IMG/VR virus record: IMGVR_UViG_3300028131_000823
Coordinates: 1 to 64,000 of that record
Length of the DNA stretch: 64,000 nucleotides
Reading direction: 5' to 3' (one strand)
The notes below the pieces were generated by a model. That model made no database searches. It was not told where the DNA came from and was given only the letters and a program-made list of their open reading frames with translations. The position numbers and the translations under genes were made by a program. This document shows, piece after piece, positions 12,381 to 63,782 of the stretch (the stretch's first letter is position 1; each line of letters starts with the position of its first letter).

Positions 12381-12718
12381 TGGTTACAGTAGTATTAGAC
12401 ATAGGAGACAATGGTGTAGTCAAAATTATAGAAGATGACAACTACAATGGAAATGGTGAAGTTAATGTCACTAAAACTCTTTATGTCTTTGATGGAGATC
12501 CTGATTATGAAAATAGAATTAAATTTTTAAAAGATCTTTGTTTAGATATTGGGTTAAGTATAGGTAATAAAGATGCTCAGAAAAGACTTAATATAAATCT
12601 TCACAAGAAGTCAAAAGACATGTCACTAATGACTAAAAAGGAATTAGAGACGAGTATTATGGCAGCAGGTAGACTTGTGGAGAAGTATAAAAAAGAACTT
12701 AAAAAATATGAATCTTAA
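12380..12718 (+). CDS. Hypothetical protein
   Basis: 112 aa, TAATG overlap. Confidence 0.7.
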   Translation: MVTVVLDIGDNGVVKIIEDDNYNGNGEVNVTKTLYVFDGDPDYENRIKFLKDLCLDIGLSIGNKDAQKRLNINLHKKSKDMSLMTKKELETSIMAAGRLVEKYKKELKKYES

Positions 12719-13157
12719 GGTAGAATGTATATGGTGTAAAACTAAAACTGATTTTAATAGATTTGCAAGAGAAACTAAAAAGTCAGAAGAATATGACAAG
12801 TTTAAAAACCAAATAATTTCTTATAATGAAATTGGAGATAGACTTTCTAAGAGTGATCCTTATGGAAATACTCCATCTGAAACTTTAGTTGCTTTACATA
12901 TACAAAAATTAATACGAAATCTTGTTAATAAAAATAGGAGAGTAGAAGAAGAAGTTGAAGAAGATCAAACTGCAAAGGTTACATATCTTCTTAAAAACTT
13001 AAATCAAGAAAATGTACTAAATTTTAAAAACTTTATTAATGAAATAGCTGATGGAGTAGAGTTTGAATTAGTAGTTATTAATAGAGAAGATAAATTAGAT
13101 CCTAAAGTATTGAGTAAATTCGATAACGTTAGAATTGTAGACAATGATAAGACATAA
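12708..13157 (+). CDS. Hypothetical protein (likely start ATG 12708)
   Basis: MNLKVECIWC...; overlaps the upstream stop. Confidence 0.65.
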   Translation: MNLKVECIWCKTKTDFNRFARETKKSEEYDKFKNQIISYNEIGDRLSKSDPYGNTPSETLVALHIQKLIRNLVNKNRRVEEEVEEDQTAKVTYLLKNLNQENVLNFKNFINEIADGVEFELVVINREDKLDPKVLSKFDNVRIVDNDKT

Positions 13158-35617: not shown

Positions 35618-38600
35618 ATGTTTGAAGGTGGAGATGACCCAATATTAGGTGGAGATGACACTGACTCAGGTTCTGGAGACGGCCCAACTGATTTTAACGA
35701 CACTGATTCGGGTGCCGGTGGAACCCCAATAGGAGATGGTGGAGATAGCGGTGGAGACGCTGATGGGGATGGAGTAGCTGATAATAAAGATGCTTTTCCA
35801 AACGATCCAACTGAAACTGCTGATACAGATGGGGATGGTGTAGGTGATAACGCTGATGACTTTCCAACAGATCCTAACGAAGACACAGATTCAGATGAAG
35901 ATGGTGTAGGTGATAACGCCGATGACTTTCCAACAGATCCTAACGAAGATACTGATACTGATGGGGACGGTGTAGGTGATAACGCTGATGACTTTCCAAC
36001 AGATCCTAACGAAGATACTGATACTGACGGGGACGGTGTAGGAGATAACACCGATGCATTTCCAAATGATTCAACTGAAACTTTAGATTCTGATGGAGAT
36101 GGTGTAGGAGATAACACTGATTCATTTCCAACAGATCCTAACGAAGACACTGATTCAGATGGAGATGGTGTAGGAGATAACGCTGATGCATTTCCAAATA
36201 ATTCAACTGAAACTTTAGATTCAGATGGAGACGGTGTAGGAGATAACACTGATGCATTTCCAAATGATTCAACTGAAACTTTAGATTCTGATGGAGACGG
36301 CGTAGGTAATAACGCTGATGCATTTCCAAATGATTCAACTGAAACTTTAGATTCTGATGGAGATGGTGTAGGTGATAATGCAGATGATTTTCCAACAGAT
36401 CCTAATCAACAAGTAGCACAAATTAATCCTAATTTAATACAACAGGTAGCTGAATCTTTAGAAAACTTAAATGGAACGTCTGATGGAAGCGATCCTTATA
36501 GTAGTTTAACTCCTTTTAAAATTAGAACAGATATAGAAAATAATGGAAGATATGACAACATTTCAAAACCATTACTTAGAACAAATCCTAAAATAAGCAC
36601 TAATATAAAGTTAATAGTTGAAAATGATCAAATGTATTTAGAAAGTTTTAATGCGACTGATCAACTTGCTGCTTCTAATTATAAAAAATATTTAGTTAAA
36701 GAAACTGGATCATATTCATATGATGTTGCTAAATTTTGGAATAAAGATTCTACACCAAATGATTTAGTTTATAAAGTAAAAAGAGATAATTCAGATTTTT
36801 CAGTATTAGATAGTTATGAAAAACAATTAGAAGAAACTTATAATTATGGTACTTCTATAAATTATAATAAACTATATGATAGTGAATTTGCAATGTTAGC
36901 TCCAATTTGGCTAGATAAAAAAGTACCTTCTAAGTTTTTAATCTATAGGGTTAAAGATCCGATAAACACAAAGAATTATTCTAATTCTGAAAATTTAGAT
37001 AGAATTAATGAAATGCTTAAAAATGCAACATTAATAAAGACAATTGATCTTTCTAATGACTCTGCTATAGGTAAATATATTAGAAATTATGTAAATGATG
37101 ATAGTTTTCCAGACTCTCCATTAACTGTTTCATTTAATAAAGATGAACAAACTTTTTATAATGGTATAGATTTAGAAAAAGGTGGCTTCACTAGTAAAGG
37201 AGAATTTCACTATAAAGATACTATTAAAACAGATAAACCTATTATAGAATATAATGATTTTATAACTGAAGGTTTTTCTAGAAATAATTTAGCATGTGCA
37301 AACTTAGTTAATTTAGAATTTTTATTTGATGATGAAGAAGCTGAAGAGTTTTCTATAAATAGGTATTTTGGAATTTATGTAGATGAACATAAATTAGGAG
37401 GAGGATCCGTTGATAATATTAAAAACGATTTATTTACATTTAAAAAAGACACACTAATCAGTGAAATGGATTTAAGCGATGTTGGTTCCGGAACTTATAT
37501 GTTACCTCATAATGTGTTTTATCAAAATATGCCAATGTTAGGTTGGATTAAAAGTTTTTCAAATTATCATAATATTAAAAATGGAGTATATTGGAATCGT
37601 AAAAATTATGAATTAAGAGCAGATACTAATAATACTGATTATAGTTTATTTACAGGAATTAAAAAGACTAATAAAAACATAGAGATTATTGTTAATACAA
37701 GTGCAGCTTCTGATTTTATTAAAATTAAAATAATAGATAACCCATTAAATGGAGATGAGTTTAGACTTTTAAAATTAAAAAAACAAAGATTCACAATAAA
37801 GATTGTAGTTAATGAAAATACAGGGTCAGTAACATTAAATGATAATACTGGATTTGGTTATACAAGACCTTCAGGCGCAACTGAATATGACACTCTTCTA
37901 GATTTAGTAAACAATTGGCCTATCAGTGTAGGTAATACTTTTGAAAAGTATGAACCTTCTTTAATTCAACGTGGCAATAAATACTTTATAGAACTTGTAG
38001 AAAAGCAATATAATTTTGAAGAAAACCATAGTATTTTTTGTTTAAATAACAACTTAACAATATTAGATGTTAAAAAAACATACACTCATATTAATGTTGT
38101 AGAAAATACATTTATAGCCGATAACAACGTTGATAAAGGTAGATTTGAAAATAATAGATTCTCAAATCAAGGTACTTTAAAGAATGTTGCAGATTCAATA
38201 AGTTCACTAATTAATAATTATACTTTATTTAGTTCTATTGTTTTAGAAAATGAAATTATAATTTATTCAGACGTTGACGGTTATAATAGAGAATTAGGAA
38301 TTTTTGTTAAAAATTTATCTTCTTCTAATTTCATAGAAATAAATGAGGAATCCTCTAATAAAAACATAACTTCTAACTTTTTATTAAATAATGAAGTTTG
38401 GTATTTAAAAGGAGGAAGTAATGTAAATTCTTCAATTTATATTAATGAAGATGATGAAGATGAAATCAGTATAGGTGAATATTTATTAGATATTGAAAAT
38501 AGATTTAATGAGGTATTAGACATAGTAGATGATCCAAGAGAGATAAATTCTAATTTTAAAAGAGTAATTCTTAAAGATAAAAACAATGGTATAGAAAATA

Positions 38601-52208: not shown

Positions 52209-52259
52209 TATTTAAGGTGATATATAATTATAATATAGTAATAAAAAAACATAATAAAA

Positions 52260-52994
52260 ATGGAAACACAAATTCAATCATTTGCTACATTTTCTGAAAC
52301 TAGAAAAGCAGCAATAGACACTAAGATAAAAGAAGAAGCGTCTACAAAGAGAACAACTGAAGCTCAAAGATTTGCTGACTTATTAGCTGAGTATGAAGTA
52401 ACCACTGTTGCTGAAATAGCTGAAGAACAAAGAACTGAATTTTTTGCTAAATTAGTTGGAGAAACTGATGAGGTAGAAACTGAAGGTAATGCATTTGGAG
52501 CAGCTGTTAAAAAAGCAAAAGAAGAAGATAAAGAAGAATTTAAAGTAGGCGGAGAAACTTACAAAGTAGAAGAATCAACAGTTACCGAAGCTAGAGCTAA
52601 ATATGTAAATACACAAAAAACAGTAGATGGTAATCCATTAATATCTTTTAATAGCTCCACTACTAGAGCTAAATGGATTGATGAAAATAAATCAAATGTT
52701 ATATCTGTACCTGATTCAACGGTTATTAATTCCGATCAAGGTAGAGTAGTAGGTTCTAGTAGAGGTCCTTATTACTTAATCGTAAAGGCAGATGTACTAG
52801 AAGAATCTAAAGTTGAAGAAGCTGAAGTTAAGTCTGATGAAGATTTTATGGAGATGGCTATGACAATGTATAAAGAAGCATTCGGTGATGATTTTGACGA
52901 GGCTAAAGCTAAAGAAGCTGCTGAAGGAATGTTAAAGAAAGCTGATGGAGACTATGGAGCTGCTGTAGGAATGTTACAATCATCTTTAGGATAA
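52260..52994 (+). CDS. Acidic internal-head/core-like protein with CTS-like N-terminus
   Basis: METQIQSFATFSE; several x-x-E^A/G sites (ETE^G, VTE^A, VEE^A); GATATATAA at 52219. Confidence 0.6.
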   Translation: METQIQSFATFSETRKAAIDTKIKEEASTKRTTEAQRFADLLAEYEVTTVAEIAEEQRTEFFAKLVGETDEVETEGNAFGAAVKKAKEEDKEEFKVGGETYKVEESTVTEARAKYVNTQKTVDGNPLISFNSSTTRAKWIDENKSNVISVPDSTVINSDQGRVVGSSRGPYYLIVKADVLEESKVEEAEVKSDEDFMEMAMTMYKEAFGDDFDEAKAKEAAEGMLKKADGDYGAAVGMLQSSLG

Positions 52995-53009
52995 AAATAA
53001 AATATAGAC

Positions 53010-54275
53010 ATGTTATTAACTTACGAACAATTTCTAGTCGAAAAGGCTCAGATAGTAGAGGGTAATTTGATTTTAGAAGGAGGAGCTGCAGGCCACATGC
53101 CTCATCCCTTTGACTATAATGATTTAACTTTCCAAGATTTTAAAACCATTGTTACAAATTCATTACAAGGTGAAATACATTTTGAAGAAGGACCTACTGA
53201 AAAAACAGATGGTCAAAACTTCTTTGTTACAGTAAAGGATGGTCAAGTTCTTTTCTCAAGAAACAAAGGGCAACTAATGGCACCTGTATCTTTAGATGGA
53301 GTTATTAAAATGTTCACGGGCCATGCATCAAAACTAGTAGAAGATACTTTTATCTATGCTGCAACAGATTTAGAAGCTGCATTATTAAGTTTAAGCGATC
53401 ACCAAGAATTTAACAATGGACAAAACTTTCTTAATATGGAGTTAATTTATTCTAAGAACCCTAATGTGATTAATTATGACAGAGATGTTATTCAATTTCA
53501 CGGCATGGCAGAAACTGATGGCAAAGGTAATATAGTTAACATGTCACAGCAAACAGGTGCAAAACTTGCAAGACTTCTTAAAGGTATAGAGGCAGATGTA
53601 CAAAAGACATTTACAATTATTCCTCCACAAATACTTAAACTTCAGAAAAACATAGATTTTGAAAAGAGACAAAGTTATTATCACAGTAAATTAAATGACT
53701 TAAGAGATGAGTTTAATTTATCAGACGGTGACGAAGTTAAAATGTATCATGAAGCATGGTGGAGAAGAGAAATTGAAAAAGATTTTGCAGATATTTCAAG
53801 TGATTTAAAAGAAGGTTTATTTTTAAGATGGGCATACAATGACAAGCAAACTATGAATATGGTTGCTATGAAAAAGATTGCTACTCCCGAACAAATGAAA
53901 AAAATCAAAGAGTTTGATAAGATAAAAGGTAAAAAGTATAAGCAGAATATTTTACCATTTGAAAACTTATTTTTAGAGTTAGGAAAAGATGTATTATTAA
54001 ATGCAAGTAATTTTGTTGCTGCAAATCCTGATTTAGAAAAGAAAAACTTACATGCTAAAATTAGAAAGGCAGCAGCTGACGTTAAACTTAACGGTGACTT
54101 AAAGCAAGTTGCTAAAATCGAAGCTGAATTAGAAAGATTAGAAAGTATTGGAGGTATCGAAGGTATTGTACCAACTGAGGGAATAGTCTTTAAATATAAA
54201 GGTAAGATTATGAAACTTACCGGCACATTTGCTGCAATTAATCAGCTTATGGGCATCATAAAATACGGAAGATAA
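53010..54275 (+). CDS. Ligase-superfamily nucleotidyltransferase-like protein with CTS-like N-terminus
   Basis: MLLTYEQFLVE, ILE^GGAAGH; motif I TEKTDG, SRNK, motif III LNMEL, motif IV EGIVF, motif V KIMKLTG. Confidence 0.6.
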   Translation: MLLTYEQFLVEKAQIVEGNLILEGGAAGHMPHPFDYNDLTFQDFKTIVTNSLQGEIHFEEGPTEKTDGQNFFVTVKDGQVLFSRNKGQLMAPVSLDGVIKMFTGHASKLVEDTFIYAATDLEAALLSLSDHQEFNNGQNFLNMELIYSKNPNVINYDRDVIQFHGMAETDGKGNIVNMSQQTGAKLARLLKGIEADVQKTFTIIPPQILKLQKNIDFEKRQSYYHSKLNDLRDEFNLSDGDEVKMYHEAWWRREIEKDFADISSDLKEGLFLRWAYNDKQTMNMVAMKKIATPEQMKKIKEFDKIKGKKYKQNILPFENLFLELGKDVLLNASNFVAANPDLEKKNLHAKIRKAAADVKLNGDLKQVAKIEAELERLESIGGIEGIVPTEGIVFKYKGKIMKLTGTFAAINQLMGIIKYGR

Positions 54276-54282
54276 ATATACT

Positions 54283-56241
54283 ATGATAATTAATTATAAT
54301 CAATTTATTTTAGAAAACGAAGATAAGGAATATGAGAAGTTAGATGCGAAAGCAGGTGACATGTCAAAAAAGTTAACCGATAAGGAGAGAGCACGTTATA
54401 AAGAATTAAGTAAAAAACATTTCCCAATAGTTATTAAAAAATTACCTGGAGATGTTTATGAAATTAAGACAGTAGGTTTAGGATATACAGGCCCACAAGG
54501 AGATGTGTTAGCAGAATATTATAGAGAAGAAATTTTAGCAAAGGTAAAAAATCCAAAAGGTATTCACATGGATATTAGAAGAAATGATGGAGGACAACAG
54601 GCTCCAGCTAAGGCAATATTGGATTTTTTTGTAGATACACCTAAAGACGAAGATGGAAATAGAAAAATTCCATTAGAACAACAAAGTAATTATTGGCCAA
54701 CTGATGAATGGACAGATGAAGATAGAGAAAGAGGTTATCAATCGAAGACTAATTATTTAGAAAGTAAAATAGAAGATAAGAATAAATTTACAAATATACC
54801 TACAGTGGTTTCCACAAGTGATTGGACATTTTCAGGAGGTGAATTCTTAACTGACACTATAAAAAACTTTGGCAAAGACAACATTACACACGTTGGCTCT
54901 AATTCAGGAGGAGGAGCAAATAGAACGTCACATACTGCCGACGACATGGCATCAACTTGGCCAGATGAAGATCCAAATGCTGAAGGATTATCAGTTGATG
55001 AAAAGTTAGAAAGATCAATGAAAGTATTTGAAAAGTTTTATGTAGATAAAGAAAAAGCCAAAGAATGTAGAGAAGCAGTTATGAAAGATCCTAGTAAATA
55101 TATTAAGGATGGAAAAATAAACGATAAAACAGTTCAAGACAAAATGCGTGAAATTACAAAAGATTTTCATGTAGCATATTTTACAAGAGAAGATGGAAAA
55201 ATTGAAGTAGCGACGCCTTATGGAAAATCTGATAGGATAGTAACTGATAAAGATGGTAAGCCATTTGGACCTCCTTATGAATTTAAAGGAAATTGGGAAG
55301 GAACAGGAACAGGAAATGCAGTACCAGGAATAGGAATTACAGAAACAGATCCAGATACTGCTAAAAACAGCGCATTAGAATTACTATATACAAAGACTGG
55401 TCAGAAAGATCAGCTTGAAAAAATGAAATCAAATCCAAAAGAATTTGGTCTTACTAAAGACGGCAAAGATGATTGGTATAAAAGAGGTACACTTGCAGAT
55501 AGAGAAGCAGGTAGAGAACATAATTACCCAGGATATGCAGCTGAAGGAAAACACCCTGAAATGTGGAAAGCTAGCCAAAAGGCAGCAAGTAAAAATATGA
55601 AAAACTGGAAAAGCATTCTTAAAAAAGCAGAGTCTAATAAAAATATAGATGATAAATCTAAACCAGAGCCTGAAAATTGGTGGGAAGAATACAGTGATGA
55701 AGCAAAGGCCAAATATATTAAAAAACACGGAGAGGCTCCAGACGTCGGTAATAAAGTAAAACCAACTAATGAAAATAAAAGAAATATTATGAAAAAGGTT
55801 AAACTATTTGAAGAATTCTTAAATGAATCAACAATGAATAATTTTAAACCCGAGGTATTGTCTAATAGAGATAAAGTAGATATGAAGCTTTTTAAAAGTT
55901 TAATGCCTAGAACTGCTAAAACGGTTAAAGACGCTGATCGTAGAATTCAAACATGGAAGGGTAATAAAATGTTTGTACATTATCAAGCATTTACAGTTCA
56001 ACCAAATGGTAATAAACCAGATTTACCAACATATAAGTTCCATAATTCACAATATTGGTTAAACGATACTCAATTAGGTTGGGCAGGTAGAGCAGGTGAA
56101 AAGGTAAACATCACTTTATTAACAATAACTGATGTAACTGATCCTGATAATGAAAAAATGTTAGGAGAACTTTATGTTAATACCGATACATATTTACAAG
56201 AACACAATATAGTATTTAACGAGTTAAAGAAAATATCATAA
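54283..56241 (+). CDS. CTS-bearing polyprotein-like ORF with S41 (tail-specific/C-terminal) peptidase domain
   Basis: MIINYNQFILE; HMDIRRNDGG resembles DLRxNxGG; VVSTSDWTFSGGE resembles TxSAAE; HVGSNSGGG resembles VGExTxG; NWEGTG; second CTS MKKVKLFEEFLNE at 55789. Confidence 0.65.
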   Translation: MIINYNQFILENEDKEYEKLDAKAGDMSKKLTDKERARYKELSKKHFPIVIKKLPGDVYEIKTVGLGYTGPQGDVLAEYYREEILAKVKNPKGIHMDIRRNDGGQQAPAKAILDFFVDTPKDEDGNRKIPLEQQSNYWPTDEWTDEDRERGYQSKTNYLESKIEDKNKFTNIPTVVSTSDWTFSGGEFLTDTIKNFGKDNITHVGSNSGGGANRTSHTADDMASTWPDEDPNAEGLSVDEKLERSMKVFEKFYVDKEKAKECREAVMKDPSKYIKDGKINDKTVQDKMREITKDFHVAYFTREDGKIEVATPYGKSDRIVTDKDGKPFGPPYEFKGNWEGTGTGNAVPGIGITETDPDTAKNSALELLYTKTGQKDQLEKMKSNPKEFGLTKDGKDDWYKRGTLADREAGREHNYPGYAAEGKHPEMWKASQKAASKNMKNWKSILKKAESNKNIDDKSKPEPENWWEEYSDEAKAKYIKKHGEAPDVGNKVKPTNENKRNIMKKVKLFEEFLNESTMNNFKPEVLSNRDKVDMKLFKSLMPRTAKTVKDADRRIQTWKGNKMFVHYQAFTVQPNGNKPDLPTYKFHNSQYWLNDTQLGWAGRAGEKVNITLLTITDVTDPDNEKMLGELYVNTDTYLQEHNIVFNELKKIS

Positions 56242-56252
56242 AATTATAAGAA

Positions 56253-58091
56253 ATGGCATTACAGGATTTAAGAACATATTATGAGTCAGTTGAAAAAGAG
56301 GATTTTAATAATCTCTTAGCACAGAAATGTTTAGTTACTGAAAAGATTCAAGCAAGTAGTCTTCATGTAAGAAGAGAAGATAGACTCTTAGAATTTTATA
56401 AATCAGGTAATAAGCAGGCTCTTAATAAAATAGATAGAACAATTGTTTCTTACTATGAAAAAGGTATAGGCCATTTTAAAGCATTATTAGACGAGACTAT
56501 TCAACAGATGCCAAGTGATTGGAAATTTGGATTTGATTATATGGTTAGTGAAAAGACAGTAGACATTGAATATGATACACTTCCAAAAAATAGTCTTATA
56601 TTAACACATATTCAAGTATTAAATGAAGACAGAACCCAGATTAAAAAAGTAATTAGAGATCCTAAGATTTTAGAAAAATGGGCTAATCTTTTAGAAGTTC
56701 AATCGCCTGAGGTTGTTTATGAAGGCATCCTTTCAGATCACCAAAAGGAAAAGTTAGTTAATATACTGAGCTTACAAGGAGAGCAAGCAAAAATAGAATT
56801 ACAAGATTTTGGTTTTTCTTATAGAGCATTTACAACATTTAACGAGTCAATTCATAAGTCAATGTTAAACAATGATATTCATAAAGACATTGATGGATTA
56901 GTTGTAAGTTTTGTAGAGGGCAAATCATTAAAGAACTTTAAACTACAGAGTCCATTAAAAGAAATTAAAGAACAAGAAGAAAGAAAGAGTTCGGATGCGT
57001 ATCAAATTACCGTAGTAAAACTTATTGAATATTTTAATGCGTTTGATTTTAGTGAAATACAACTTGAAAGTAAAGAAGTTGATGAGAGATATTTAGAATT
57101 AATGACAGCAGGTTTTAATTCATTTATAAAAGATAATGGAGCAAGCTTTATTGGCATGAATTTTGATAGCGCAGAGTTTGCAAACAATGAAGCATTTGAT
57201 TTAAATCCAAAAATGATAACAAATCAAGAAACTATTAGGCTTGTTAATGAATCAAGAGAAGTCGCAGAATTATTAAAAATAACATTAGGTACTTTTAGAA
57301 AGAAGAGACAGAAAGAAAATGGAGTTTTAGCAGGAGATGCATTTAATAGTTTAAACGGTATTATAGAAAAGATTGAAGCAAGAATTTACGAAAAAGTAGA
57401 GGAAGATAGTGTAATGGATTTTAAAACATTTAAAATTAACGATACACTTAAGGGACAAACAAATCCAATTAACGAAGGTTTAAAAGTAAACCATCCTGAA
57501 AGAGGAGCTAAAGAAGTTAATATGTTTGTTGGTAGGTTTCAGCCATTCACATTAGGACATGTTAAAGTCGTTGAACATTTGCATAAACAAAATGGACTTC
57601 CAACTGTTATATTTTTAGTTAAAGCTAAAAAGAAAAAGAAAGAAGACAGTTTTAAAAGACCATTTGATGAAACAATGCAGGTAAATATGATAAAACAGGT
57701 GATGAAGGAATATCCTATTGAGACAGTGTATGTTATAGATACCGCAGCAATTGACAAAATGTTTAATGCTATGAGACCTAAGTATGAACCTGTATTATGG
57801 GGAACAGGTAGTGATAGAATGAAAACATATGGCTATCAAGTTAATAACCCAAAATATAGAGGAGAATTAGGAGTTGAAGATAGCTTCAGATTAGAAGAAA
57901 TTCCAAGGACAGACGATAACATTAGTGCAACAAAGGTAAGAAACGCTTTATTAGATGGAGACGAAAAGACATATAAGTCCATGACTCCAAAATCTATGCA
58001 CAAAATGTATAAATTATTAAAACAAACAATGGAAGAAAGTGTTGAACTACAAGAACAAGTTTTAACATTTTCAGAATTTAAAAGCAAATAA
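56253..58091 (+). CDS. Fusion: RNA-ligase-like domain + TxGH nucleotidyltransferase (NMNAT/PPAT/cytidylyltransferase family)
   Basis: VTEKIQAS (degenerate motif I), DIDGLVVSF, NFKL; VGRFQPFTLGH, GTGSDR, ISATKVR; C-terminal VLTFSEFK. Confidence 0.75.
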   Translation: MALQDLRTYYESVEKEDFNNLLAQKCLVTEKIQASSLHVRREDRLLEFYKSGNKQALNKIDRTIVSYYEKGIGHFKALLDETIQQMPSDWKFGFDYMVSEKTVDIEYDTLPKNSLILTHIQVLNEDRTQIKKVIRDPKILEKWANLLEVQSPEVVYEGILSDHQKEKLVNILSLQGEQAKIELQDFGFSYRAFTTFNESIHKSMLNNDIHKDIDGLVVSFVEGKSLKNFKLQSPLKEIKEQEERKSSDAYQITVVKLIEYFNAFDFSEIQLESKEVDERYLELMTAGFNSFIKDNGASFIGMNFDSAEFANNEAFDLNPKMITNQETIRLVNESREVAELLKITLGTFRKKRQKENGVLAGDAFNSLNGIIEKIEARIYEKVEEDSVMDFKTFKINDTLKGQTNPINEGLKVNHPERGAKEVNMFVGRFQPFTLGHVKVVEHLHKQNGLPTVIFLVKAKKKKKEDSFKRPFDETMQVNMIKQVMKEYPIETVYVIDTAAIDKMFNAMRPKYEPVLWGTGSDRMKTYGYQVNNPKYRGELGVEDSFRLEEIPRTDDNISATKVRNALLDGDEKTYKSMTPKSMHKMYKLLKQTMEESVELQEQVLTFSEFKSK

Positions 58092-58092
58092 G

Positions 58093-59103
58093 ATGAGTAT
58101 AAGAACAGATTTTCAAATATTATTAAATAAAGCTATTAAAAGAGAAGATCTTTTAGTAGAAGGAAATATAGGTAAGTATCAATCACTAGGAAGTTTAAAT
58201 AATTTAAAGGCAAAGCAACAAATGTTTGACCTTATTAACAAAGATTATTTTAAAGGAAAATCTCCTTTTTCAAAGAGATTAACTTTAACAGAAATAGATG
58301 ATTCTACAATGCAAGAAGTTTTTACATTAATGAGTGAAGATATTGATGCAGCAAATACAATATTTAATTTAAAAAGAACAGGTATTGGTTCAGGTGAAAT
58401 ATTAATGGCATACCTTGTTGAAAACTTAGTAATAGGAGGAGGTAGTGCAGATGTAGACTTAAACTTATTCGATCCAAAGTCGGGTAAATTTTTAAGTGCT
58501 GGAATAGCAGAATTAAAAGAGGTTACAAGAACAAATGATGGTTTTTTAAAAGGTTGGAGAACAGGCGCAAGGCACGCTGCAATTAGAGCACAGGCTATTG
58601 CGGATATTAGAAATTTATATTTAGCAGTTAGGGATTCTATTACTGAATTAGACCCTACTACAAAGGCTGGTCAAGCTGCAGCAATAAGTGCAGCAAAAGG
58701 AGAATATTCAGCACTACTTAAATATTTTGAAGACCTAGATGCAATACCAGCAGCAGCTGATAGAGATTTTAAACTTAAACAAGGTACAAAAGGTGAAATA
58801 ATCGTAAAGTTTCAAGGGAATGTAATAGGTAATATTGGTGACGCAAAAACAATTTCAGAAATTAATAAGATTTTAAGTCAAGATGTTAATACGAATGTAA
58901 AAACTTATAGGCAAATCGAAGAAGAAGTGGCAAAAGGGTTTGGAGATATAGATGAAAAGTTTGTATTTATTAGAACTACAGGAAAATCTGAAAAGAAAAA
59001 GATACAAGGTATTTATTATAAGGAAAAATTACCTGATAATGCTAAAGAATTAAAAATATCAGAAGTCACTCAAAATACGATTAAAGTTAAAGTAAAAATT
59101 TGA
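58093..59103 (+). CDS. Putative PD-(D/E)xK nuclease-like protein
   Basis: GIGSGEILM...DVD...AELKEV pattern; N-terminal LLVE^G site. Confidence 0.4.
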   Translation: MSIRTDFQILLNKAIKREDLLVEGNIGKYQSLGSLNNLKAKQQMFDLINKDYFKGKSPFSKRLTLTEIDDSTMQEVFTLMSEDIDAANTIFNLKRTGIGSGEILMAYLVENLVIGGGSADVDLNLFDPKSGKFLSAGIAELKEVTRTNDGFLKGWRTGARHAAIRAQAIADIRNLYLAVRDSITELDPTTKAGQAAAISAAKGEYSALLKYFEDLDAIPAAADRDFKLKQGTKGEIIVKFQGNVIGNIGDAKTISEINKILSQDVNTNVKTYRQIEEEVAKGFGDIDEKFVFIRTTGKSEKKKIQGIYYKEKLPDNAKELKISEVTQNTIKVKVKI

Positions 59104-59138
59104 TATATAATAGATAGGACAAAAAATAAAGAAAAAAA

Positions 59139-61592
59139 ATGGCAACATTCGAAGAATTTTTAAACGAAAGAAATATAACTCTTAAAAGAAGATATACTGA
59201 ATCACACCCTTCCCAAACTGTAGGCAATTCAGCTAGAGTTAGAAATGCAATTATCGAAGCATTAAAGGATGGCAAAATAACAGTTGAAGAATTTAATAAT
59301 ATAGTTAGTCAACACTCTTCTGCTCCATCAAAATGGACAAGAGGTAATAAAAGATTTTTCAAAATAGAAGAAGATGGCGTAAGTCTTTCTAAATATGGAA
59401 CAAAAATATTAAATAGCTTAGTTACTGAATCTATAGATGAAGGTTTAAATAAGTCAGATGTTACATATCAATTAGCAATAGATTATACAGGTAGAACTAA
59501 GCCGAAAATTACTAAACTTAATAAGAAAAGACTTGAAATTAAGTACGGTTATAAAATTAGCCCAGAAACGGTAATTGATTCTATCAAGAAGGTTCATCCA
59601 GAAGTAGAACTTAAACATGTTGAATGGTCAGATAAAATGTCAGGTGGAGGTTTTCACATATTTGATATTTTAGAATCTGCAGTTACTGAAGGAACATATG
59701 ACTCAAAAGATCATATAGGATCTACATCAGATGGACAAGGTTCTAATGCTGAGATTTATAAAAAAGGTAGAGGATATTATGTAGTTGTTAGTGGAGAGTA
59801 TGATTATGACTTCGAGGCTAAGAATGACAAAGAACTAATAAATAAGTTAGAAGAATATGAATTTGATTCTTCTGATATTTTAGAATCAGCGATTAATAAT
59901 ATAGAAGAAAATATGATACATAATAATTTTAATGAATTCATTAATAAATCAATTAATGAAAATAACGTACAGGATTTAGATATGGAAGATATGAATCCTA
60001 AAATGGCTAAGCAGCTATTAAACATGGCTAGTAAACAATATAAAAACGAATTTCAAGGATCTTATACTGTAGATAAAGGAAATAAAAAAATGAGGTTTGA
60101 TACTTATAGTGCTTTATTAGCTATGGTAAAGCAAAAAGATTCTGGACCTTATGGTCCTTCATATGGTATTAATATTGGAGGAAATAATGAATTAGAAGAT
60201 TTTGAAGGTAATGTTTTAGGTAAGCTAAATGATAAATCATTATCAAGTGCAATTAGTAGTGTTGCAGCTGCTATGAAAATGGCAGCTAAAAACAGTAATG
60301 AATCAGTAGTTACTGAAGCCAGAGTAAGTGCAAAAAAGTTATTAAAATCAGTTGTAAATGGAGAAAGTAACTCAGTTGAAGGTATTAAACTTTCTAAAGA
60401 AATGGCCCAATCATTTTTAGAGTGGCTAGATCAATCAAGTTATGGTAGAAAATTTAGCGATCTTCCATTTGATAAATTATTTAGTGCAGCATTTAATTGG
60501 GGTATTGAAAGATATGCTAAAGACAATAAACTGAAAAATGAATTAAAAGATTTAAAAACAAAGGCAAAAACAATGAAAGAATCAAAAATATACGAAAGTT
60601 TCAGTGAATTTGTTAATGAATCTTTAGAACTTAATGAAGCATTAAAGAGTTCTAAACTTAGAGGACTTCTTACTATGAAAAGAGGTAGTAAGGCAATTTT
60701 AAAAGCAATTTATGGCTTTAGTAAAATAGAATTAGACAAAATAACAGATGATCAAATAATAGATATTGATCCTAAATTAGGTAAAAAAGCAGAAGGTTTA
60801 GTTGTTTATTATACAACTCAAGAAAAAGACAACCCTTATGCTGATACTTCAAAATCTACATATAATTCTGCTGGTAAAATTCCAGCAAATACAATACTTG
60901 CATTAGGTATGGGAAAAGACGTTGCATATGTTAAAAGAGATTATATTAAGAGAAAAATGACAATGTCTTTAACTACAGATCCTAGAAAATCATCTTATGA
61001 TATTGGAATTAATAAAGAGTATAGAGGCTGGGACGCATCCGGTATTTATAATGTAAAAAGAGTAATTGATGTTGCAGACGCTGCATTTGTAATTAATACT
61101 AACGCTCTTCCAAATACTAAAGGAAAAATTGAAGACAGAGTAAAAGCTAAAGAAGGTGCATTAGCATTTAAATCTGATAAGGAATTTAAAGATGCAAACA
61201 TAGCAAGATATAGAGAAATTCTACAAAAGAGAGCAAGTGAATTACCAATAGATAAATTAGTAGAAGATGCAATTGATGATGCAACTAAGGTTATGAAAGA
61301 TGGTTTAAAAAATCAAGAAAAAAATAAGTACGGAGAACTTATTGCAGGTGTAGGAAAGGACGGTAGAGCTTATAAATTAAATGACATTAGTAATTTTATA
61401 AATGGTTTAATTTCAGACTATGAAAGATGGTCAGGTTATATGGCAACAATTGAAGAGGCTGAAGCTAAATATGGTAAAGATTCTAGAGAATTTGAATGGG
61501 AAGCTAGATATTCTCAAAAAGAATCTGAGGAATACGCAAAGAGAATTAAAGATAAATTAGCTAAACTTAAGAAAAGAAACTTAGCTTGGTAA
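59139..61592 (+). CDS. 817 aa CTS-bearing polyprotein-like internal protein
   Basis: MATFEEFLNE; internal HNNFNEFINK and ESFSEFVNE; repeated IDE^G, VTE^G, VTE^A, LNE^A sites; GATATATAA at 59102. Confidence 0.65.
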   Translation: MATFEEFLNERNITLKRRYTESHPSQTVGNSARVRNAIIEALKDGKITVEEFNNIVSQHSSAPSKWTRGNKRFFKIEEDGVSLSKYGTKILNSLVTESIDEGLNKSDVTYQLAIDYTGRTKPKITKLNKKRLEIKYGYKISPETVIDSIKKVHPEVELKHVEWSDKMSGGGFHIFDILESAVTEGTYDSKDHIGSTSDGQGSNAEIYKKGRGYYVVVSGEYDYDFEAKNDKELINKLEEYEFDSSDILESAINNIEENMIHNNFNEFINKSINENNVQDLDMEDMNPKMAKQLLNMASKQYKNEFQGSYTVDKGNKKMRFDTYSALLAMVKQKDSGPYGPSYGINIGGNNELEDFEGNVLGKLNDKSLSSAISSVAAAMKMAAKNSNESVVTEARVSAKKLLKSVVNGESNSVEGIKLSKEMAQSFLEWLDQSSYGRKFSDLPFDKLFSAAFNWGIERYAKDNKLKNELKDLKTKAKTMKESKIYESFSEFVNESLELNEALKSSKLRGLLTMKRGSKAILKAIYGFSKIELDKITDDQIIDIDPKLGKKAEGLVVYYTTQEKDNPYADTSKSTYNSAGKIPANTILALGMGKDVAYVKRDYIKRKMTMSLTTDPRKSSYDIGINKEYRGWDASGIYNVKRVIDVADAAFVINTNALPNTKGKIEDRVKAKEGALAFKSDKEFKDANIARYREILQKRASELPIDKLVEDAIDDATKVMKDGLKNQEKNKYGELIAGVGKDGRAYKLNDISNFINGLISDYERWSGYMATIEEAEAKYGKDSREFEWEARYSQKESEEYAKRIKDKLAKLKKRNLAW

Positions 61593-62098
61593 TGAACGAA
61601 AACGTTACACCAGCAAATATTGGAGGTATGGGAAATCCTGCCTTTCCACAAGGTGGAGAAGTAGGAAGTGGAGATGTGCCAGCTGGTAAAGGAGATGCTA
61701 AGAAAGAGCAAAAGAAAAAGAAGAAAGAAAGAGAAGAATATCTTAAAAATAGAAAAGAAGAAATGGTACATACTACATTTAGTGGATTTATAAATGAAGC
61801 TAAAATTAAAGATGCTAGAAAAGATTTAGGCTATATTGCATTTCTTGAAGAAATGGCAGAAATTAATAATAGAGACATTCAAAACGCATATGATGTTGCA
61901 CTAAAAGTTTTACAAGATAAAGGTATGAGTGAAAAGGAAGCAATTGGATTTTTAAACTCACCACATGGAAAGTATATGGCAGAATATTTAATTCCAGGTC
62001 AAGATTATAGTCATGAAGCATTCTTAGACAAATTAGATGAATACTATAACGAAAGAATGTTGAAACAATATGCAAAGGATTTTAAAAACCTAGCATAA
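61592..62098 (+). CDS. Hypothetical protein with internal CTS-like motif (likely start ATG 61592)
   Basis: TAATG overlap; MNENVTPANIGGMG...VGSGD; internal MVHTTFSGFINE^A at 61763. Confidence 0.6.
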   Translation: MNENVTPANIGGMGNPAFPQGGEVGSGDVPAGKGDAKKEQKKKKKEREEYLKNRKEEMVHTTFSGFINEAKIKDARKDLGYIAFLEEMAEINNRDIQNAYDVALKVLQDKGMSEKEAIGFLNSPHGKYMAEYLIPGQDYSHEAFLDKLDEYYNERMLKQYAKDFKNLA

Positions 62099-62120
62099 GA
62101 ATAAGTTAGTATTTATAATT

Positions 62121-62154
62121 AAAACCCAAGTTCTCGCAGATCTTGGGTTTTTTT
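62121..62154 (+). terminator. Intrinsic terminator
   Basis: AAAACCCAAG/CTTGGGTTTT 10 bp stem plus T tract. Confidence 0.8.
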
Positions 62155-62243
62155 GTTAATAACTTTAGTAAAAAAGTTGCCTCAAAATTTTCACGGGTCA
62201 AAGATTATAGTTATATTAGTATTATAATTAAAACTTAAACTAG
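62153..62243 (+). promoter_or_regulatory. Conserved ~90 bp upstream element, copy 3 (putative early promoter)
   Basis: 52 bp identical to copy 2. Confidence 0.8.
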
Positions 62244-62519
62244 ATGAGCTATACAAATTTTAACAGACATGAATCAATGAATTCAGAAACTAGAAAAGAA
62301 ATCATGAACTTAATTAATGATTTAATAAATTACGATGAACAAATAGATAAAAAATTAAGAAGATCTATTGAAAACAAATTATATGGTTTATTTGATGGTT
62401 ATTTATATGATAAACTTCAATTGAATGCATTAGAATGTCCAAGTGATTTAGCAAGTAGAATTATGAAAATATATCATAAATGTGCAATGTACCCAAAGTC
62501 AAAAACAATTATATTTTAA
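62244..62519 (+). CDS. Hypothetical protein (putative early gene)
   Basis: 91 aa directly behind conserved element copy 3. Confidence 0.7.
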   Translation: MSYTNFNRHESMNSETRKEIMNLINDLINYDEQIDKKLRRSIENKLYGLFDGYLYDKLQLNALECPSDLASRIMKIYHKCAMYPKSKTIIF

Positions 62520-62557
62520 TCTGATATATAATATAATATTAAAAATAAAATAACAAG

Positions 62558-62980
62558 ATGAACAATATTAAGAATTTTAACGACTTTATTAATGAGTCTC
62601 AAGAAATAAACGAAGGTACTCGTTCTCAATTTGGAAAAATTGATAAAAAAGGAAATATAACTTCAGTTTATATGCATTATGATGGTTATCCAGAAAACGT
62701 ATTACCTATTTTAAGAAAAGGTTATAAAGGTGGAAAAAATGTAGATTATGTACTTTCACAAGGAAGTGGTTCAGGTCTTGAAGTAAATCCTAAGAAAATT
62801 AACTTTTATAAAGATGATAGAGATTCTCAATCAACTGGTAATGTTGCAACAATTGCAAATTATTTATCAGATGTAGAAGATGATGGTGGAGCAGAATACG
62901 TTTATTTATGGGATGAAAGATCAAAGCAATGGATGATGGCATCTTATGGTGAAAGAGACTTAAAGGTTGCAGAAGTTTAA
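62558..62980 (+). CDS. CTS-bearing hypothetical protein (YxHYDGYP family)
   Basis: MNNIKNFNDFINE, INE^G, VYMHYDGYP, AEYVYLW; GATATATAA at 62523. Confidence 0.7.
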   Translation: MNNIKNFNDFINESQEINEGTRSQFGKIDKKGNITSVYMHYDGYPENVLPILRKGYKGGKNVDYVLSQGSGSGLEVNPKKINFYKDDRDSQSTGNVATIANYLSDVEDDGGAEYVYLWDERSKQWMMASYGERDLKVAEV

Positions 62981-62996
62981 AAAAATTAAAGTAACA

Positions 62997-63308
62997 ATGA
63001 AAAACGTAAAATTATTCGAAGAATTTATAAACGAAGATATTGACTCAAATAAAATATTTGAATTAACTGAACTAGAAAAAAAAATTAATGGCTTTACAGG
63101 CCAAGCACAGGTAAAAGCTAAAGTTGGAGTAACGACATTTTCTGTTTCAAAATACATGATAGTGTTTGATTATGACGAAGCTAATAAAGATTTACCATTT
63201 GTATTTAGACCAGATATGAAATCTGCAAAAGTAGCAAAGGATAAATTAGAAAAAACTGACATGTTTACTCCTGAAATGAACTTAAGAATTGAAGAAATTA
63301 AATATTAA
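62997..63308 (+). CDS. CTS-bearing hypothetical protein (likely start ATG 62997)
   Basis: MKNVKLFEEFINE. Confidence 0.7.
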   Translation: MKNVKLFEEFINEDIDSNKIFELTELEKKINGFTGQAQVKAKVGVTTFSVSKYMIVFDYDEANKDLPFVFRPDMKSAKVAKDKLEKTDMFTPEMNLRIEEIKY

Positions 63309-63326
63309 AATTAAAAAAACAAAGTT

Positions 63327-63782
63327 ATGAAAAATATAAAATTATTCGAAGAGTTTATCAATGAAAACGATATGATGGCTACAACGCCAGCAGAACTTAA
63401 AAAAATGGCTAAAAAATTTAAACAAATCCATTATGACATGGCCTCCGGTGATTTTGAAGAGGAAGATATAGATGCAAACTTTAAATTTATAACAGACTTT
63501 CTTGGAACAGACCAAATAGTTGAAATAGTTGGAGGAGACCATTGGGCTAATCATTCTTCTGGAAAAGAATTAACAGACATTTATAATGATTTAATCACTA
63601 AGATTAAAAACAAGAAAGACCATGAATTAGATTCAGGAGCAGACTATGTTACAGGTACATTAAATGGAGCAAAGGTAGTTTGTCAATACGATGGTTACAG
63701 TACCCCTACTCATTTATCAATTATGATAAACGTTAATGACATTAAAAAGTTTGACATTAAAACAACACCTTTTGTAGTTTAA
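63327..63782 (+). CDS. CTS-bearing hypothetical protein
   Basis: MKNIKLFEEFINE. Confidence 0.7.
   Translation: MKNIKLFEEFINENDMMATTPAELKKMAKKFKQIHYDMASGDFEEEDIDANFKFITDFLGTDQIVEIVGGDHWANHSSGKELTDIYNDLITKIKNKKDHELDSGADYVTGTLNGAKVVCQYDGYSTPTHLSIMINVNDIKKFDIKTTPFVV

What the first reader, a model, noticed from the sequence alone, without database searches (positions are those of the whole stretch)
54283..62098. Polyprotein-like ORFs with internal copies of the targeting tag and protease sites
Seen: the tag recurs inside long ORFs, in frame and starting at a Met with an A-rich upstream like an independent gene start. Cases are MKKVKLFEEFLNE at 55789, MIHNNFNEFINK at 59913, MKESKIYESFSEFVNE at 60573 and MVHTTFSGFINE at 61763, plus a C-terminal VLTFSEFK in 56253-58091. 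Domains are separated by short linkers with IDE^G, VTE^G, INE^G, VTE^A and LNE^A. Inference: formerly separate tagged genes fused by stop loss into polyproteins that the prohead protease cuts into several effectors, and/or internal starts make nested products. This would be a modular way to add cargo.
Basis: partly seen in the sequence, partly recalled or inferred. Interest (0 to 1): 0.8.

Follow-up and report, generated by a model that had tools for sequence, protein, structure and literature searches.

The report
Tagged, cleavable phage cargo polyproteins
A marine T4-related phage joins small protein modules into long genes, each module preceded by a T4-like head-targeting or protease-cut signal, and relatives carry the same modules as separate genes or in other combinations, so this looks like a mix-and-match way to load proteins into the virus head.

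Summary
All four in-frame internal tags and the C-terminal tag-like motif lie at the stated coordinates. The tag motif occurs 16 times against 3.3 expected, and 7 times at N-termini against 0.13 expected.

The tag (aromatic-x-x-aromatic-[I/L]-x-E) has its conserved residues at the positions that mutagenesis showed matter in the T4 capsid targeting sequence MKTYQEFIAE. The T4 gp23 maturation site (FGSFLTE|A) fits the same pattern. The same genome, about 25 kb downstream, encodes a T4-type portal, a gp21-family (S77) prohead protease and a gp23-type capsid protein beginning MANLINE|AEI.

ORF 59139-61592 consists of six modules. In 150 divergent relatives these modules occur alone, or at other positions in other proteins. 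In 199 of 200 cases an h-x-E|[A/G/S] site lies just before the module.

Syntenic relatives carry split versions: a stand-alone D3 gene, and a two-gene form that differs from the fused form by one reading frame. A1 and A2 are stand-alone genes elsewhere. Close relatives differ by clean in-frame module insertions or deletions flanked by linker repeats.

Packaging and cleavage are inferred, not shown. ORF 56253-58091 is a stable, conserved two-domain enzyme, not a recent fusion. I rate this a new variant of the T4 internal-protein system.

The parts
52219..52227 (+). Late-promoter-like motif GATATATAA, 41 nt upstream of the tagged gene 52260
   Evidence: 12 copies in the window against 2.8 expected. 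11 are on the + strand; 10 of these lie 12-46 nt before an ATG, of baseplate/tail genes and of tagged operons.
52260..52994 (+). Acidic tagged gene (METQIQSFATFSE). It holds a 77-aa module flanked by 39-nt imperfect direct repeats at 52567-52605 and 52798-52836.
   Evidence: Relatives have 0, 1 (either one) or 2 modules at the same ES|..E[AG] junction (D7, 69). The window's module also occurs inside the ORF-D homologue of L008 at 86% identity.
53010..54275 (+). Conserved tagged gene (MLLTYEQFLVE|KAQIVE|G), DUF6267-like. Left anchor of the variable slot.
   Evidence: 97-99% identical in L005-L010. Its predicted structure resembles the N-terminal domain of the ORF 56253 family.
54283..55788 (+). 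Module A1 of ORF 54283-56241: own tag MIINYNQFILE, weak S41-peptidase-like region
   Evidence: Pfam PF03572, E = 8.6e-5, below the curated cut-off. A stand-alone 522-aa gene at 86% identity (P0152) sits in another context and has a C-terminal tag remnant.
55789..56241 (+). Module A2, starting with the internal tag MKKVKLFEEFLNE (55789-55827)
   Evidence: A stand-alone gene in the same slot in L005 (94% identity) and L008 (90%). The tag plus 12 nt upstream resembles the real gene starts at 62985 and 63315 (D1).
56253..58091 (+). Conserved two-domain enzyme: RNA-ligase-like N-terminal domain and NMNAT/cytidylyltransferase-like C-terminal domain. Inter-domain tag and cut-like site at 57414-57488; C-terminal tag-like VLTFSEFKSK at 58059-58088.
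   Evidence: Pfam PF01467 and PDB NMNAT hits; Atlas RNA_ligase neighbours. 565 homologues; the 120 listed are nearly all 609-619 aa. VM[ND]F..[FY]...SPI.E|[AG] and [LM]TF..F[IK]K are conserved at 51% identity.
58093..59103 (+). ORF C with a variant tag MSIRTDFQILLNK..LLVE|G
   Evidence: L008 and L010 have a different 532-aa body behind the same first ~12 residues. L007 has an extra ~620-aa gene inserted before it, flanked by a ~60-nt direct repeat that spans ..FSEFKSK*-MSIRT.
59102..59110 (+). Late-promoter-like motif GATATATAA, 37 nt upstream of ORF D
59139..59444 (+). ORF D: N-terminal tag MATFEEFLNE, module M1 (aa 11-94) and linker VTE|S-IDE|G (aa 95-102)
   Evidence: M1 was found in 67 representatives at positions 4 to 986, in 66 of them with h-x-E just upstream. 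It also occurs in short proteins P0082, P0084 and P0114.
59445..59693 (+). ORF D module M2 (aa 103-176) and linker ILE|S-AVTE|G
   Evidence: 13 representatives, all preceded by ..E|[GAK]. Short tagged proteins P0139 and P0149.
59694..59912 (+). ORF D module M3 (aa 186-246) followed by ILE|S
   Evidence: 19 representatives, all preceded by h-T/N-E|[GA] and followed by ILE|... P0123 and P0136 have it directly after an N-terminal tag.
59913..60320 (+). Internal tag MIHNNFNEFINK-SINE|N (59913-59963), module M4 and linker NE|S-VVTE|A
   Evidence: Stand-alone tagged homologues P0085 and P0119. This block is absent from the ORF-D homologue of L005.
60321..60572 (+). ORF D module M5 (aa 395-478)
   Evidence: 30 representatives, all preceded by h-x-E|[AGR]; many sit directly after an N-terminal tag (P0098, P0103, P0110, P0117).
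60573..61592 (+). Internal tag MKESKIYESFSEFVNE|SLELNE|A (60573-60638) and module D3 (aa 501-817, ending LAW)
   Evidence: D3 always lies at the C-terminal end of proteins up to about 1,100 aa, or stands alone at ~330-345 aa. 69 of 69 copies are preceded by h-x-E|. A stand-alone gene in syntenic L028, L030 and L031. AF2 pLDDT 82, no PDB fold match.
61592..62098 (+). ORF E: E1 (aa 1-57, resembles a segment near the capsid-protein N-terminus, then a K-rich stretch), internal tag MVHTTFSGFINE|A (61763-61798) and module E2
   Evidence: L005, L006 and L010 have an extra ~80-aa module between F[IL]NE| and AKIKD. L005, L007 and L010 have an extra C-terminal module after h-x-EG. E1 is 44% identical to capsid-protein residues 52-87.
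62523..63782 (+). Promoter-like motif (62523-62531) and three stand-alone tagged cargo genes: 62558-62980, 62997-63308, 63327-63782
   Evidence: In L005 the 62558 homologue carries ~157 extra aa inserted between INES and QEINE|G.

Best explanation
Region 52260-63782 is the hyperplastic internal-protein (capsid cargo) locus of an uncultured marine phage of the T4 superfamily; its nearest GenBank relatives are huge phages and Lak megaphages.

The tag has two halves. An aromatic pair three residues apart corresponds to T4 CTS residues 4 and 7, which direct targeting to the prohead core. The following [I/L/V]-x-E corresponds to residues 8 and 10, which direct cutting by the gp21-type prohead protease.

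Cargo is built as beads on a string. The N-terminal tag takes the whole chain into the prohead. Each module is preceded by h-x-E|[A/G/S], often doubled as ..E|S-h-x-E|G, and the protease would cut there and release several small proteins inside the head.

New combinations arise in two ways: recombination at the short, repeated tag- and linker-coding sequences, which inserts, deletes or swaps modules in frame; and loss of the stop or frame between adjacent tagged genes.

Shown: the motif, the modularity, the split and fused states, the linker repeats, the T4-type head genes in the same genome, and the shared promoter-like motif. Inferred: targeting, cleavage, retention in the head or injection, and what the modules do.
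For: 1. Match to T4. The T4 CTS is MKTYQEFIAE. Targeting maps to residues 4 and 7, processing to residues 8 and 10. Window tags such as MATFEEFLNE (59139) and MKTFIEYLEE (46694) conserve those positions. T4 gp23 residues 59-66 read FGSFLTE|A, at the end of the 65-residue propeptide.

2. T4-type head genes in the same genome. L018 is 100% identical to L015 over 11.7 kb, and L015 is 100% identical to the window over 3.8 kb. L018 carries Portal_T4, a 632-aa Peptidase_S77 protein and Gp23. The protease aligns to T4 gp21 (E = 1e-11) and to PDB 5JBL, with GELDHP and ISSRAAG matching GELNHP and VSSRGLG. The capsid protein starts MANLINE|AEI..IIE|S..INE|A, and a 114-aa tagged acidic protein sits where T4 has gp67/68.

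3. Junctions. 199 of 200 module starts, and 130 of 131 internal ones, in 150 representatives from clusters at 50% identity have h-x-E just upstream. P3 is L/V/I in 95%, P2 is N in 60%, and P1' is A/G/S in 79%. Six unrelated modules share this.

4. Split and fused states.

5. Module indels between relatives whose flanking genes are 97-99% identical, bounded by linker repeats.

6. Tag-coding DNA differs at synonymous sites (TTT/TTC, AAT/AAC, GAA/GAG, ATA/ATC), so selection acts on the peptide.

7. The GATATATAA motif precedes both tail/baseplate genes and tagged operons.
Against: There is no protein-level evidence. No virion proteome, cleavage assay or expression data exist for this uncultured phage.

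Almost all modules have no recognisable function: Pfam, PHROGs and NCBIfam gave nothing for most, and D3 has no PDB fold match. 'Effector' is therefore an assumption.

Some tagged proteins are very acidic (8066: net -44; 52260: net -20) and look more like scaffold or core material than delivered enzymes.

Many N-terminal tags have R, K, N or D after the Glu rather than a small residue.

The h-x-E motif could be carried along simply because every cassette descends from a tagged gene.

The promoter-like motif was not shown to be a late promoter.

ORF 56253-58091 has no clean N-terminal tag, yet it carries conserved internal and C-terminal tag-like motifs that this model explains only loosely.
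Confidence: 0.65

Rival explanations
1. The internal tags act as internal translation starts. The long ORFs give nested products, each with its own N-terminal tag, and proteolysis of a polyprotein is not needed.
For: All four internal tags in the window begin with ATG. They have A-rich leaders (A fraction 0.66) like real starts (0.57) and unlike other internal ATGs (0.43). The region around 55777-55827 resembles real gene starts, including 12 nt upstream of the ATG (D1). No Shine-Dalgarno-like sequence is evident before the gene starts I inspected. T4 itself has annotated in-frame internal starts, gp21' and gp26'.
Against: Only 33 of 131 internal junctions in relatives have an aromatic-pair tag nearby, and only 19 of those keep a Met. 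Close relatives have tags without a Met, for example L006 SVVTVYTNFQQFVNE and L010/P0003 EENTIHASFQQFVNE. Three of the five boundaries in ORF D have no Met at all. The Met and the A-rich leader are also what a recent fusion of two genes would leave behind with no function.
Confidence: 0.2
2. These are uncleaved multidomain ('polyvalent') proteins. The tags and E-rich linkers are only flexible spacers and recombination junctions, kept because they allow in-frame domain shuffling at the DNA level.
For: Direct repeats of linker- or tag-coding DNA flank modules that are present or absent in relatives. C-terminal tag remnants are found in P0152, P0153, the L007 insert and the L028 299-aa gene, as expected from recombination inside tags. 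Phage polyvalent proteins are an established class (PMC5512222).
Against: Conservation is at the peptide level with synonymous variation. The invariant residue is Glu, with a hydrophobic residue two positions before and a small residue after, which matches T4 gp21-type cut sites. The same motif ends the capsid-protein propeptide. A spacer does not need an invariant Glu directly abutting six unrelated folds.
Confidence: 0.15
3. The tagged proteins are prohead core or scaffold material, like T4 gp22, gp67 and gp68. They are cut into pieces and mostly expelled during maturation, so they are not cargo delivered to the host.
For: Several are very acidic and of low complexity (8066 net -44; 52260 net -20; the L018 114-aa protein). 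T4 gp22, gp67 and gp68 are rich in h-x-E sites and are degraded by gp21. The scaffold-like tail of the 632-aa protease carries six tag-like Y..[YH][IVL]AE repeats.
Against: Modules of 64-480 aa with confident predicted folds (D3 pLDDT 82), enzyme-like domains (S41-like, NMNAT-like, RNA-ligase-like) and basic mature modules (pI 9-10) look like retained proteins rather than disposable scaffold. The hypervariability between near-identical phages fits accessory functions better than an essential scaffold.
Confidence: 0.2
4. The tags are chance matches, or a composition effect of an AT-rich genome.
For: The genome is about 30% G+C, and K, N, E, F and I are common.
Against: Residue shuffles give 3.3 matches against 16 observed, and 0.13 against 7 at N-termini. 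Few matches occur in the minus-strand frames. The motif recurs at the N-termini of nearly all 150 divergent homologues.
Confidence: 0.01

Closest known systems
T4 internal proteins IPI, IPII, IPIII and Alt, with the capsid targeting sequence (Mullaney and Black 1996; reviewed in PMC9026906, PMC3012670, PMC9958956)
   Same: A ~10-residue N-terminal tag with an aromatic pair, a hydrophobic residue and a terminal Glu. A gp21-family protease and a gp23-type capsid protein are in the same genome. Diverse, non-conserved cargo bodies sit behind a conserved tag. The locus is variable between close relatives.
   Different: In T4 each cargo protein is one gene with one tag and one cut. Here up to six modules are strung together in one ORF, each with its own cut-like site. 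Many junctions keep only the processing half of the tag. Modules move in frame between genes. Tag-like motifs also occur internally and at C-termini.
T4 prohead core proteins gp22, gp67 and gp68 (gp21 substrates cut at many sites)
   Same: Multiple h-x-E sites in one chain, acidic composition of some members, and a tagged 114-aa acidic gene between the portal and protease genes.
   Different: T4 core proteins are degraded to small peptides. Here the pieces between sites are conserved, independently occurring, folded modules of 64-480 aa.
Inner-body and ejection proteins of phiKZ, 201phi2-1 and SPN3US (PMC5694885, PMC9026906)
   Same: Many head-internal proteins are processed after Glu by a gp21-related protease. 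Redundant cut sites occur, and paralogues share conserved N-termini.
   Different: Those phages use S/A-x-E or A-x-E motifs and mostly long (>100 aa) propeptides. The motif here is L/I/V-x-E with short T4-like tags. The papers I read describe no comparable shuffling of modules between such proteins.
Polyvalent proteins of phages and conjugative elements (Iyer, Burroughs, Anand, de Souza, Aravind 2017; PMC5512222)
   Same: Several unrelated domains in one phage polypeptide, predicted to be packaged and delivered with the DNA and possibly released by proteolysis. Solo versions of the domains exist.
   Different: In the passages I read, processing is attributed to peptidase domains built into the protein (zincin-like MPTase) and no shared linker signal is described. 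Here every junction carries a site matching the phage's own prohead protease, together with a T4-type targeting tag, and Pfam found no metallopeptidase domain.
Modular shuffling in T4-type hyperplastic regions through conserved flanking sequences (Repoila et al. 1994; Arbiol et al. 2010; both recalled from memory, not read here)
   Same: Short conserved sequences flanking accessory genes act as recombination points that swap cassettes between related phages.
   Different: In those cases the junctions are non-coding regulatory cassettes or the CTS at a gene start. Here the junctions are coding linkers inside ORFs, so shuffling happens at the domain level and in frame.

Membership tests
T4-type CTS-targeted capsid internal proteins | N-terminal ~10-residue targeting sequence with the functionally mapped residues: positions 4 and 7 aromatic (targeting), position 8 hydrophobic and position 10 Glu (processing) | tested here: met
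   MATFEEFLNE, MKTFIEYLEE and M..KLFEEFINE compared with T4 MKTYQEFIAE. Enrichment statistics.
T4-type CTS-targeted capsid internal proteins | The same genome encodes a gp21-family (Peptidase_S77) prohead protease | tested here: met
   L018:15901-17799 hits PF03420. BLASTP to T4 gp21 gives E = 1e-11 with the GELDHP and ISSRAAG motifs. It also hits PDB 5JBL. L018 is 100% identical to the window's contig across the overlaps.
T4-type CTS-targeted capsid internal proteins | A gp23-type major capsid protein matured at the same kind of site | tested here: met
   PF07068 capsid protein with N-terminus MANLINE|AEI..IIE|S..INE|A. T4 gp23 has FGSFLTE65|A66. Cleavage itself was not observed.
T4-type CTS-targeted capsid internal proteins | The protein is physically present in the head and its tag is removed | not testable with these tools
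   Needs virion proteomics or N-terminal sequencing.
T4-type CTS-targeted capsid internal proteins | Expressed late, together with head genes | tested here: inconclusive
   The GATATATAA motif is shared by tail/baseplate genes, the tagged core gene and the tagged operons. Promoter activity and timing are unknown.
Polyvalent proteins (Iyer et al. 2017) | Two or more unrelated domains in one phage-encoded polypeptide, with solo versions elsewhere | tested here: met
   Six modules in ORF D and two in ORF A, each found alone or in other combinations.
Polyvalent proteins (Iyer et al. 2017) | Typical domain content (MPTase or other built-in peptidase, ART, methylase, ParB-like domains and so on) | tested here: not met
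   Pfam, PHROGs and PDB sequence searches found only a weak S41-like hit in A1 and nothing in ORF D.
phiKZ-like inner-body / ejection proteins | S/A-x-E cut motif and mostly long (>100 aa) propeptides | tested here: not met
   P3 is L/V/I in 95% of 199 junctions, and tags are 10-20 aa long.
gp21-family prohead protease (for the 632-aa protein) | Conserved His and Ser motifs of T4 gp21 | tested here: met
   GELDHP and ISSRAAG align with T4 GELNHP and VSSRGLG. These are the two positions that read Ala in the 5JBL chain. That they are catalytic is my inference.

The most novel reading that the evidence does not exclude
A whole clade of uncultured marine T4-superfamily phages uses a portable two-part peptide code: an aromatic pair for head targeting, and h-x-E|small for release by the prohead protease. 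With it they assemble, shuffle and deliver combinatorial polyprotein cargo. The phmmer search with ORF D found 538 protein clusters. Recombination at the linker-coding repeats makes new cargo sets between phages that are otherwise nearly identical. This would be a natural plug-and-play packaging system acting at the domain level.
Probability: 0.5. Interest if true: 0.8.

Novelty: new variant of a known kind. Interest (0 to 1): 0.7.

Why it matters
T4's capsid targeting sequence is the textbook route for putting proteins into a phage head, and it is already used to package foreign proteins. If this reading is right, nature has extended that route into a modular polyprotein format: one targeting tag, many cleavable beads, and in-frame shuffling at the linkers.

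It would explain how large phages diversify their injected protein set quickly. It would give function-agnostic sequence rules for predicting virion cargo in metagenomic phages. It would mark out hundreds of uncharacterised small modules as candidate early-acting, host-directed proteins. It would also supply natural cleavable linkers and tags for phage-based delivery.

The claim can be tested directly with virion proteomics or a simple protease assay.

Tried and rejected
- GenBank phages. Megablast of the region and tblastn of ORF D found nothing. Only the baseplate wedge and capsid protein placed the phage, nearest to LR756500 and the Lak megaphages.
- Family libraries. Pfam, PHROGs and NCBIfam gave no family for most modules.
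- PDB sequence searches of 53010 and ORF A found nothing.
- D3. The AF2 model is good (pLDDT 82) but Foldseek against the PDB found no match, so its function stays unknown.
- A1 in IMG/VR matched only identical contigs. The wider protein search was needed to find P0152.
- P0010 looked like a stand-alone D3 gene, but its contig has a run of N exactly at the junction, so I discarded it as evidence.
- Whole-ORF-D structure prediction was dropped, because MAFFT misplaced the module fragments (alignment A2, about 15% identity for three modules).
- Head genes inside the window. ORF 16443 turned out to be a baseplate hub, so I walked the contig instead.
- LR756500, 41 kb around its capsid gene. The same capsid-protein N-terminus and protease-scaffold fusion are present, but there is no clear run of tagged genes.
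- Literature string searches for the tag peptides found nothing.
- The idea that mature modules are uniformly basic, like the T4 internal proteins, was rejected. M1, M2, M5 and D3 are basic, but M3, E2 and several whole proteins are acidic.
Full report
**What the window is**

The window is bases 1-64000 of IMG/VR contig IMGVR_UViG_3300028131_000823 (205 kb). Locus L004 places ORF 59139 at contig position 59139. The genome is about 30% G+C and nearly all genes are on the + strand. It has no near match among GenBank phages. Its baseplate wedge and major capsid protein are closest to the uncultured huge phage LR756500 (41% and 50% identity) and to the Prevotella Lak megaphages (31-37%).

**Checking the observation**

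- The strict motif [FYW]..[FYW][ILVM].E occurs 16 times in the 66 window proteins, against 3.3 +/- 1.8 in residue shuffles.
- Within the first 15 residues it occurs 7 times against 0.13.
- Few matches occur in the minus-strand frames.
- Tagged N-termini are at 1148 (TTG start), 8066, 46694, 52260, 53010, 54283, 59139, 62558, 62997 and 63327.
- The leaders of the internal tag ATGs are as A-rich as real gene starts.

**What the tag resembles**

The T4 capsid targeting sequence is MKTYQEFIAE. Mutagenesis reviewed in PMC9026906 maps targeting to residues 4 and 7, and processing to residues 8 and 10; Asp at position 10 blocks cutting but not targeting. The window tags conserve those positions, for example MATFEEFLNE. 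The T4 gp23 propeptide of 65 residues ends in FGSFLTE65|A66, which is the same pattern. Tag-coding DNA is only 71-85% identical between copies and differs at synonymous sites, so selection acts on the peptide.

**Does the phage have the matching machinery?**

I walked downstream with exact-protein look-ups. L015 is 100% identical to the window over 3.8 kb. L018 and L019 are 100% identical to L015 over 11.7 kb. This is therefore the same genome, about 25 kb past the window end. It carries:

- T4-like replication genes: a PolB encoded in two separate genes, RecA/UvsX-like, DnaB/gp41-like, and gp46/47-like;
- a gp15-like and a gp2-like gene;
- a Portal_T4 gene;
- a 114-aa acidic gene beginning MKIKTFNQFITE|A, in the place where T4 has gp67/68;
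- a 632-aa Peptidase_S77 protein;
- a Gp23-type capsid protein.

BLASTP confirms portal to gp20 (E = 2e-30), protease to gp21 (E = 1e-11, with GELDHP and ISSRAAG aligned to T4 GELNHP and VSSRGLG) and capsid protein to gp23 (E = 4e-12). The protease also matches PDB 5JBL. The capsid protein begins MANLINE|AEI..IIE|S..INE|A. The long tail of the protease carries six tag-like Y..[YH][IVL]AE repeats, like the h-x-E-rich T4 scaffold gp22.

**Modularity**

A full phmmer search of ORF 59139-61592 against 1.84 billion representatives gave 538 hits. Alignment starts and ends cluster at five points and define six modules: M1 to M5 and D3. Each module occurs in dozens of proteins, at different positions and with different neighbours, and also in short proteins directly after an N-terminal tag. 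Nearly all 150 listed representatives begin with a tag-like N-terminus.

Of 200 module starts, 199 have h-x-E immediately upstream, and 130 of 131 internal ones do. P3 is L/V/I in 95%, P2 is N in 60%, and P1' is A/G/S in 79%. Only 33 of the internal junctions also have an aromatic pair nearby, and 19 of those keep a Met. So most internal junctions retain only the processing half of the tag.

In the window, the doublet E[ST]..h-x-E[AG] is 29-fold denser in tagged proteins than in the rest. In ORF D, 10 of its 12 h-x-E[AGS] sites sit at the five boundaries.

**Split against fused**

- A2 is a stand-alone gene in the same slot in L005 and L008.
- A1 is a stand-alone 522-aa gene (P0152, 86% identity) in another context.
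- In the syntenic locus L028 the ORF-D position holds two genes: a 299-aa gene that contains M1 and ends in a tag remnant, then 22 nt, then a stand-alone tagged D3 gene.
- In L030 a 249-aa gene (tag, one module, M1) overlaps a stand-alone D3 gene by 8 nt in another frame. The two-gene and fused forms therefore differ by one reading frame.
- Linkers upstream of internal full tags are rich in N, K, E and T, as expected from reading through an A-rich intergenic spacer.

**Shuffling between close relatives**

The flanking genes are 97-99% identical, yet:

- ORF 52260 has 0, 1 (either one) or 2 modules at one ES|..E[AG] junction, and the window's module is flanked by a 39-nt imperfect direct repeat;
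- the 62558 homologue in L005 has gained ~157 aa between INES and QEINE|G;
- ORF E gains a module between F[IL]NE| and AKIKD, and another at its C-terminus;
- L007 has an extra ~620-aa gene flanked by a ~60-nt repeat spanning ..FSEFKSK*-MSIRT;
- ORF C is replaced in L008 and L010 by a different body behind the same first 12 residues.

**An exception: ORF 56253-58091**

This ORF is not a recent fusion. It has 565 homologues, and the 120 listed are nearly all 609-619 aa. It combines an RNA-ligase-like domain with an NMNAT-like nucleotidyltransferase. Its inter-domain VM[ND]F..[FY]...SPI.E|[AG] and its C-terminal [LM]TF..F[IK]K are conserved at 51% identity. The C-terminal motif is therefore a family feature. 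It may be a targeting motif without a cut site, but that is speculation.

**Expression context**

GATATATAA occurs 12 times against 2.8 expected. Eleven copies are on the + strand, and 10 of these lie 12-46 nt upstream of an ATG. These ATGs include baseplate/tail genes (13775, 20827, 22079, 35618), the tagged operons (8066, 46694, 52260, 59139, 62558) and, in L018, the gp15-like gene and the tagged core gene. This fits co-expression with virion genes but does not prove it.

**Conclusion**

The best reading is a T4-type internal-protein system extended to modular, cleavable polyproteins, with recombination at tag and linker sequences generating cargo diversity. The genomic parts are shown. Targeting, cleavage and delivery are inferred by analogy with T4 and the phiKZ-like phages. 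The closest published concepts are the T4 CTS and internal proteins, and the polyvalent proteins of Iyer et al. 2017. The papers I read describe neither a shared per-junction protease-site code nor in-frame module shuffling of this kind. The literature searches were limited to the open-access library.

Noticed in passing
window 2671, 8033, 13747, 20792, 22047, 35572, 46682, 47830, 52219, 59102, 62523 (+ strand); L018 9989, 10766, 15497: The motif (T)GATATATAA(T) lies 12-46 nt upstream of many start codons, of both structural genes and tagged genes. There are 12 copies against 2.8 expected, 11 of them on the + strand. It is a likely phage late-type promoter; compare T4 TATAAATA (from memory).
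   Followed up: partly
window 61592-61699 (ORF E aa 1-36) versus L018:17881-19287 (capsid protein aa 52-87): The first ~36 residues of ORF E (NIGGMGNPAFP..GSGD) are 44% identical to a segment near the N-terminus of the gp23-type capsid protein (pairwise E = 7e-7). The E-like gene in distant L028 has the same segment. This could be a second, capsid-protein-mimicking way of attaching to the shell.
   Followed up: partly
L018:15901-17799: The prohead protease is 632 aa, against 212 aa in T4. Its long C-terminal extension is scaffold-like, with six Y..[YH][IVL]AE repeats, so it looks like a gp21-gp22 fusion. LR756500 has a 632-aa counterpart (L026:18055-19953).
   Followed up: partly
L004:21072-22292 (contig about 70.2-71.4 kb): A 406-aa tagged protein (MILQYNEFLTE.., FPQFLNE.., LINE|G) with a hydrophobic, probably membrane-spanning C-terminal region lies between nrdA and the second PolB gene. 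Tagged genes are therefore not confined to the flagged locus.
   Followed up: no
L015:5518-6918 and L015:12028-13236: The family-B DNA polymerase is encoded in two genes (exonuclease/N-terminal part and polymerase C-terminal part). They are separated by the nrdB and nrdA genes and two further genes.
   Followed up: no
window 35618-41320 (aa 545) and 12708-13157 (aa 106): Tag-like motifs (IIEYNDFITE|G and LNFKNFINE|I) occur inside a 1,900-aa tail-region protein and inside a small upstream protein. I did not examine whether these are chance matches or cut sites.
   Followed up: no
window 1148-1468: A small ORF with a probable TTG start encodes a tagged N-terminus (M)KTIKTFESFISE|K. An ATG-only gene call would start it far downstream.
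   Followed up: no
window 8066-8689: A tagged, extremely acidic 207-aa protein (net charge -44) sits behind a GATATATAA motif. It could be a prohead core or scaffold component far from the head gene cluster.
   Followed up: no
L018:12785-13258: A TnsA-like endonuclease domain gene (PF08722) sits among the neck and head genes. It may be a mobile or homing-type endonuclease.
   Followed up: no
L024 (T4 123065-123450): The T4 record annotates alt.-1 and alt.-2 as an old duplication of the first part of gene alt, with a new stop and start. This is a small T4 precedent for duplicating and splitting the tagged 5' end of a cargo gene.
   Followed up: no
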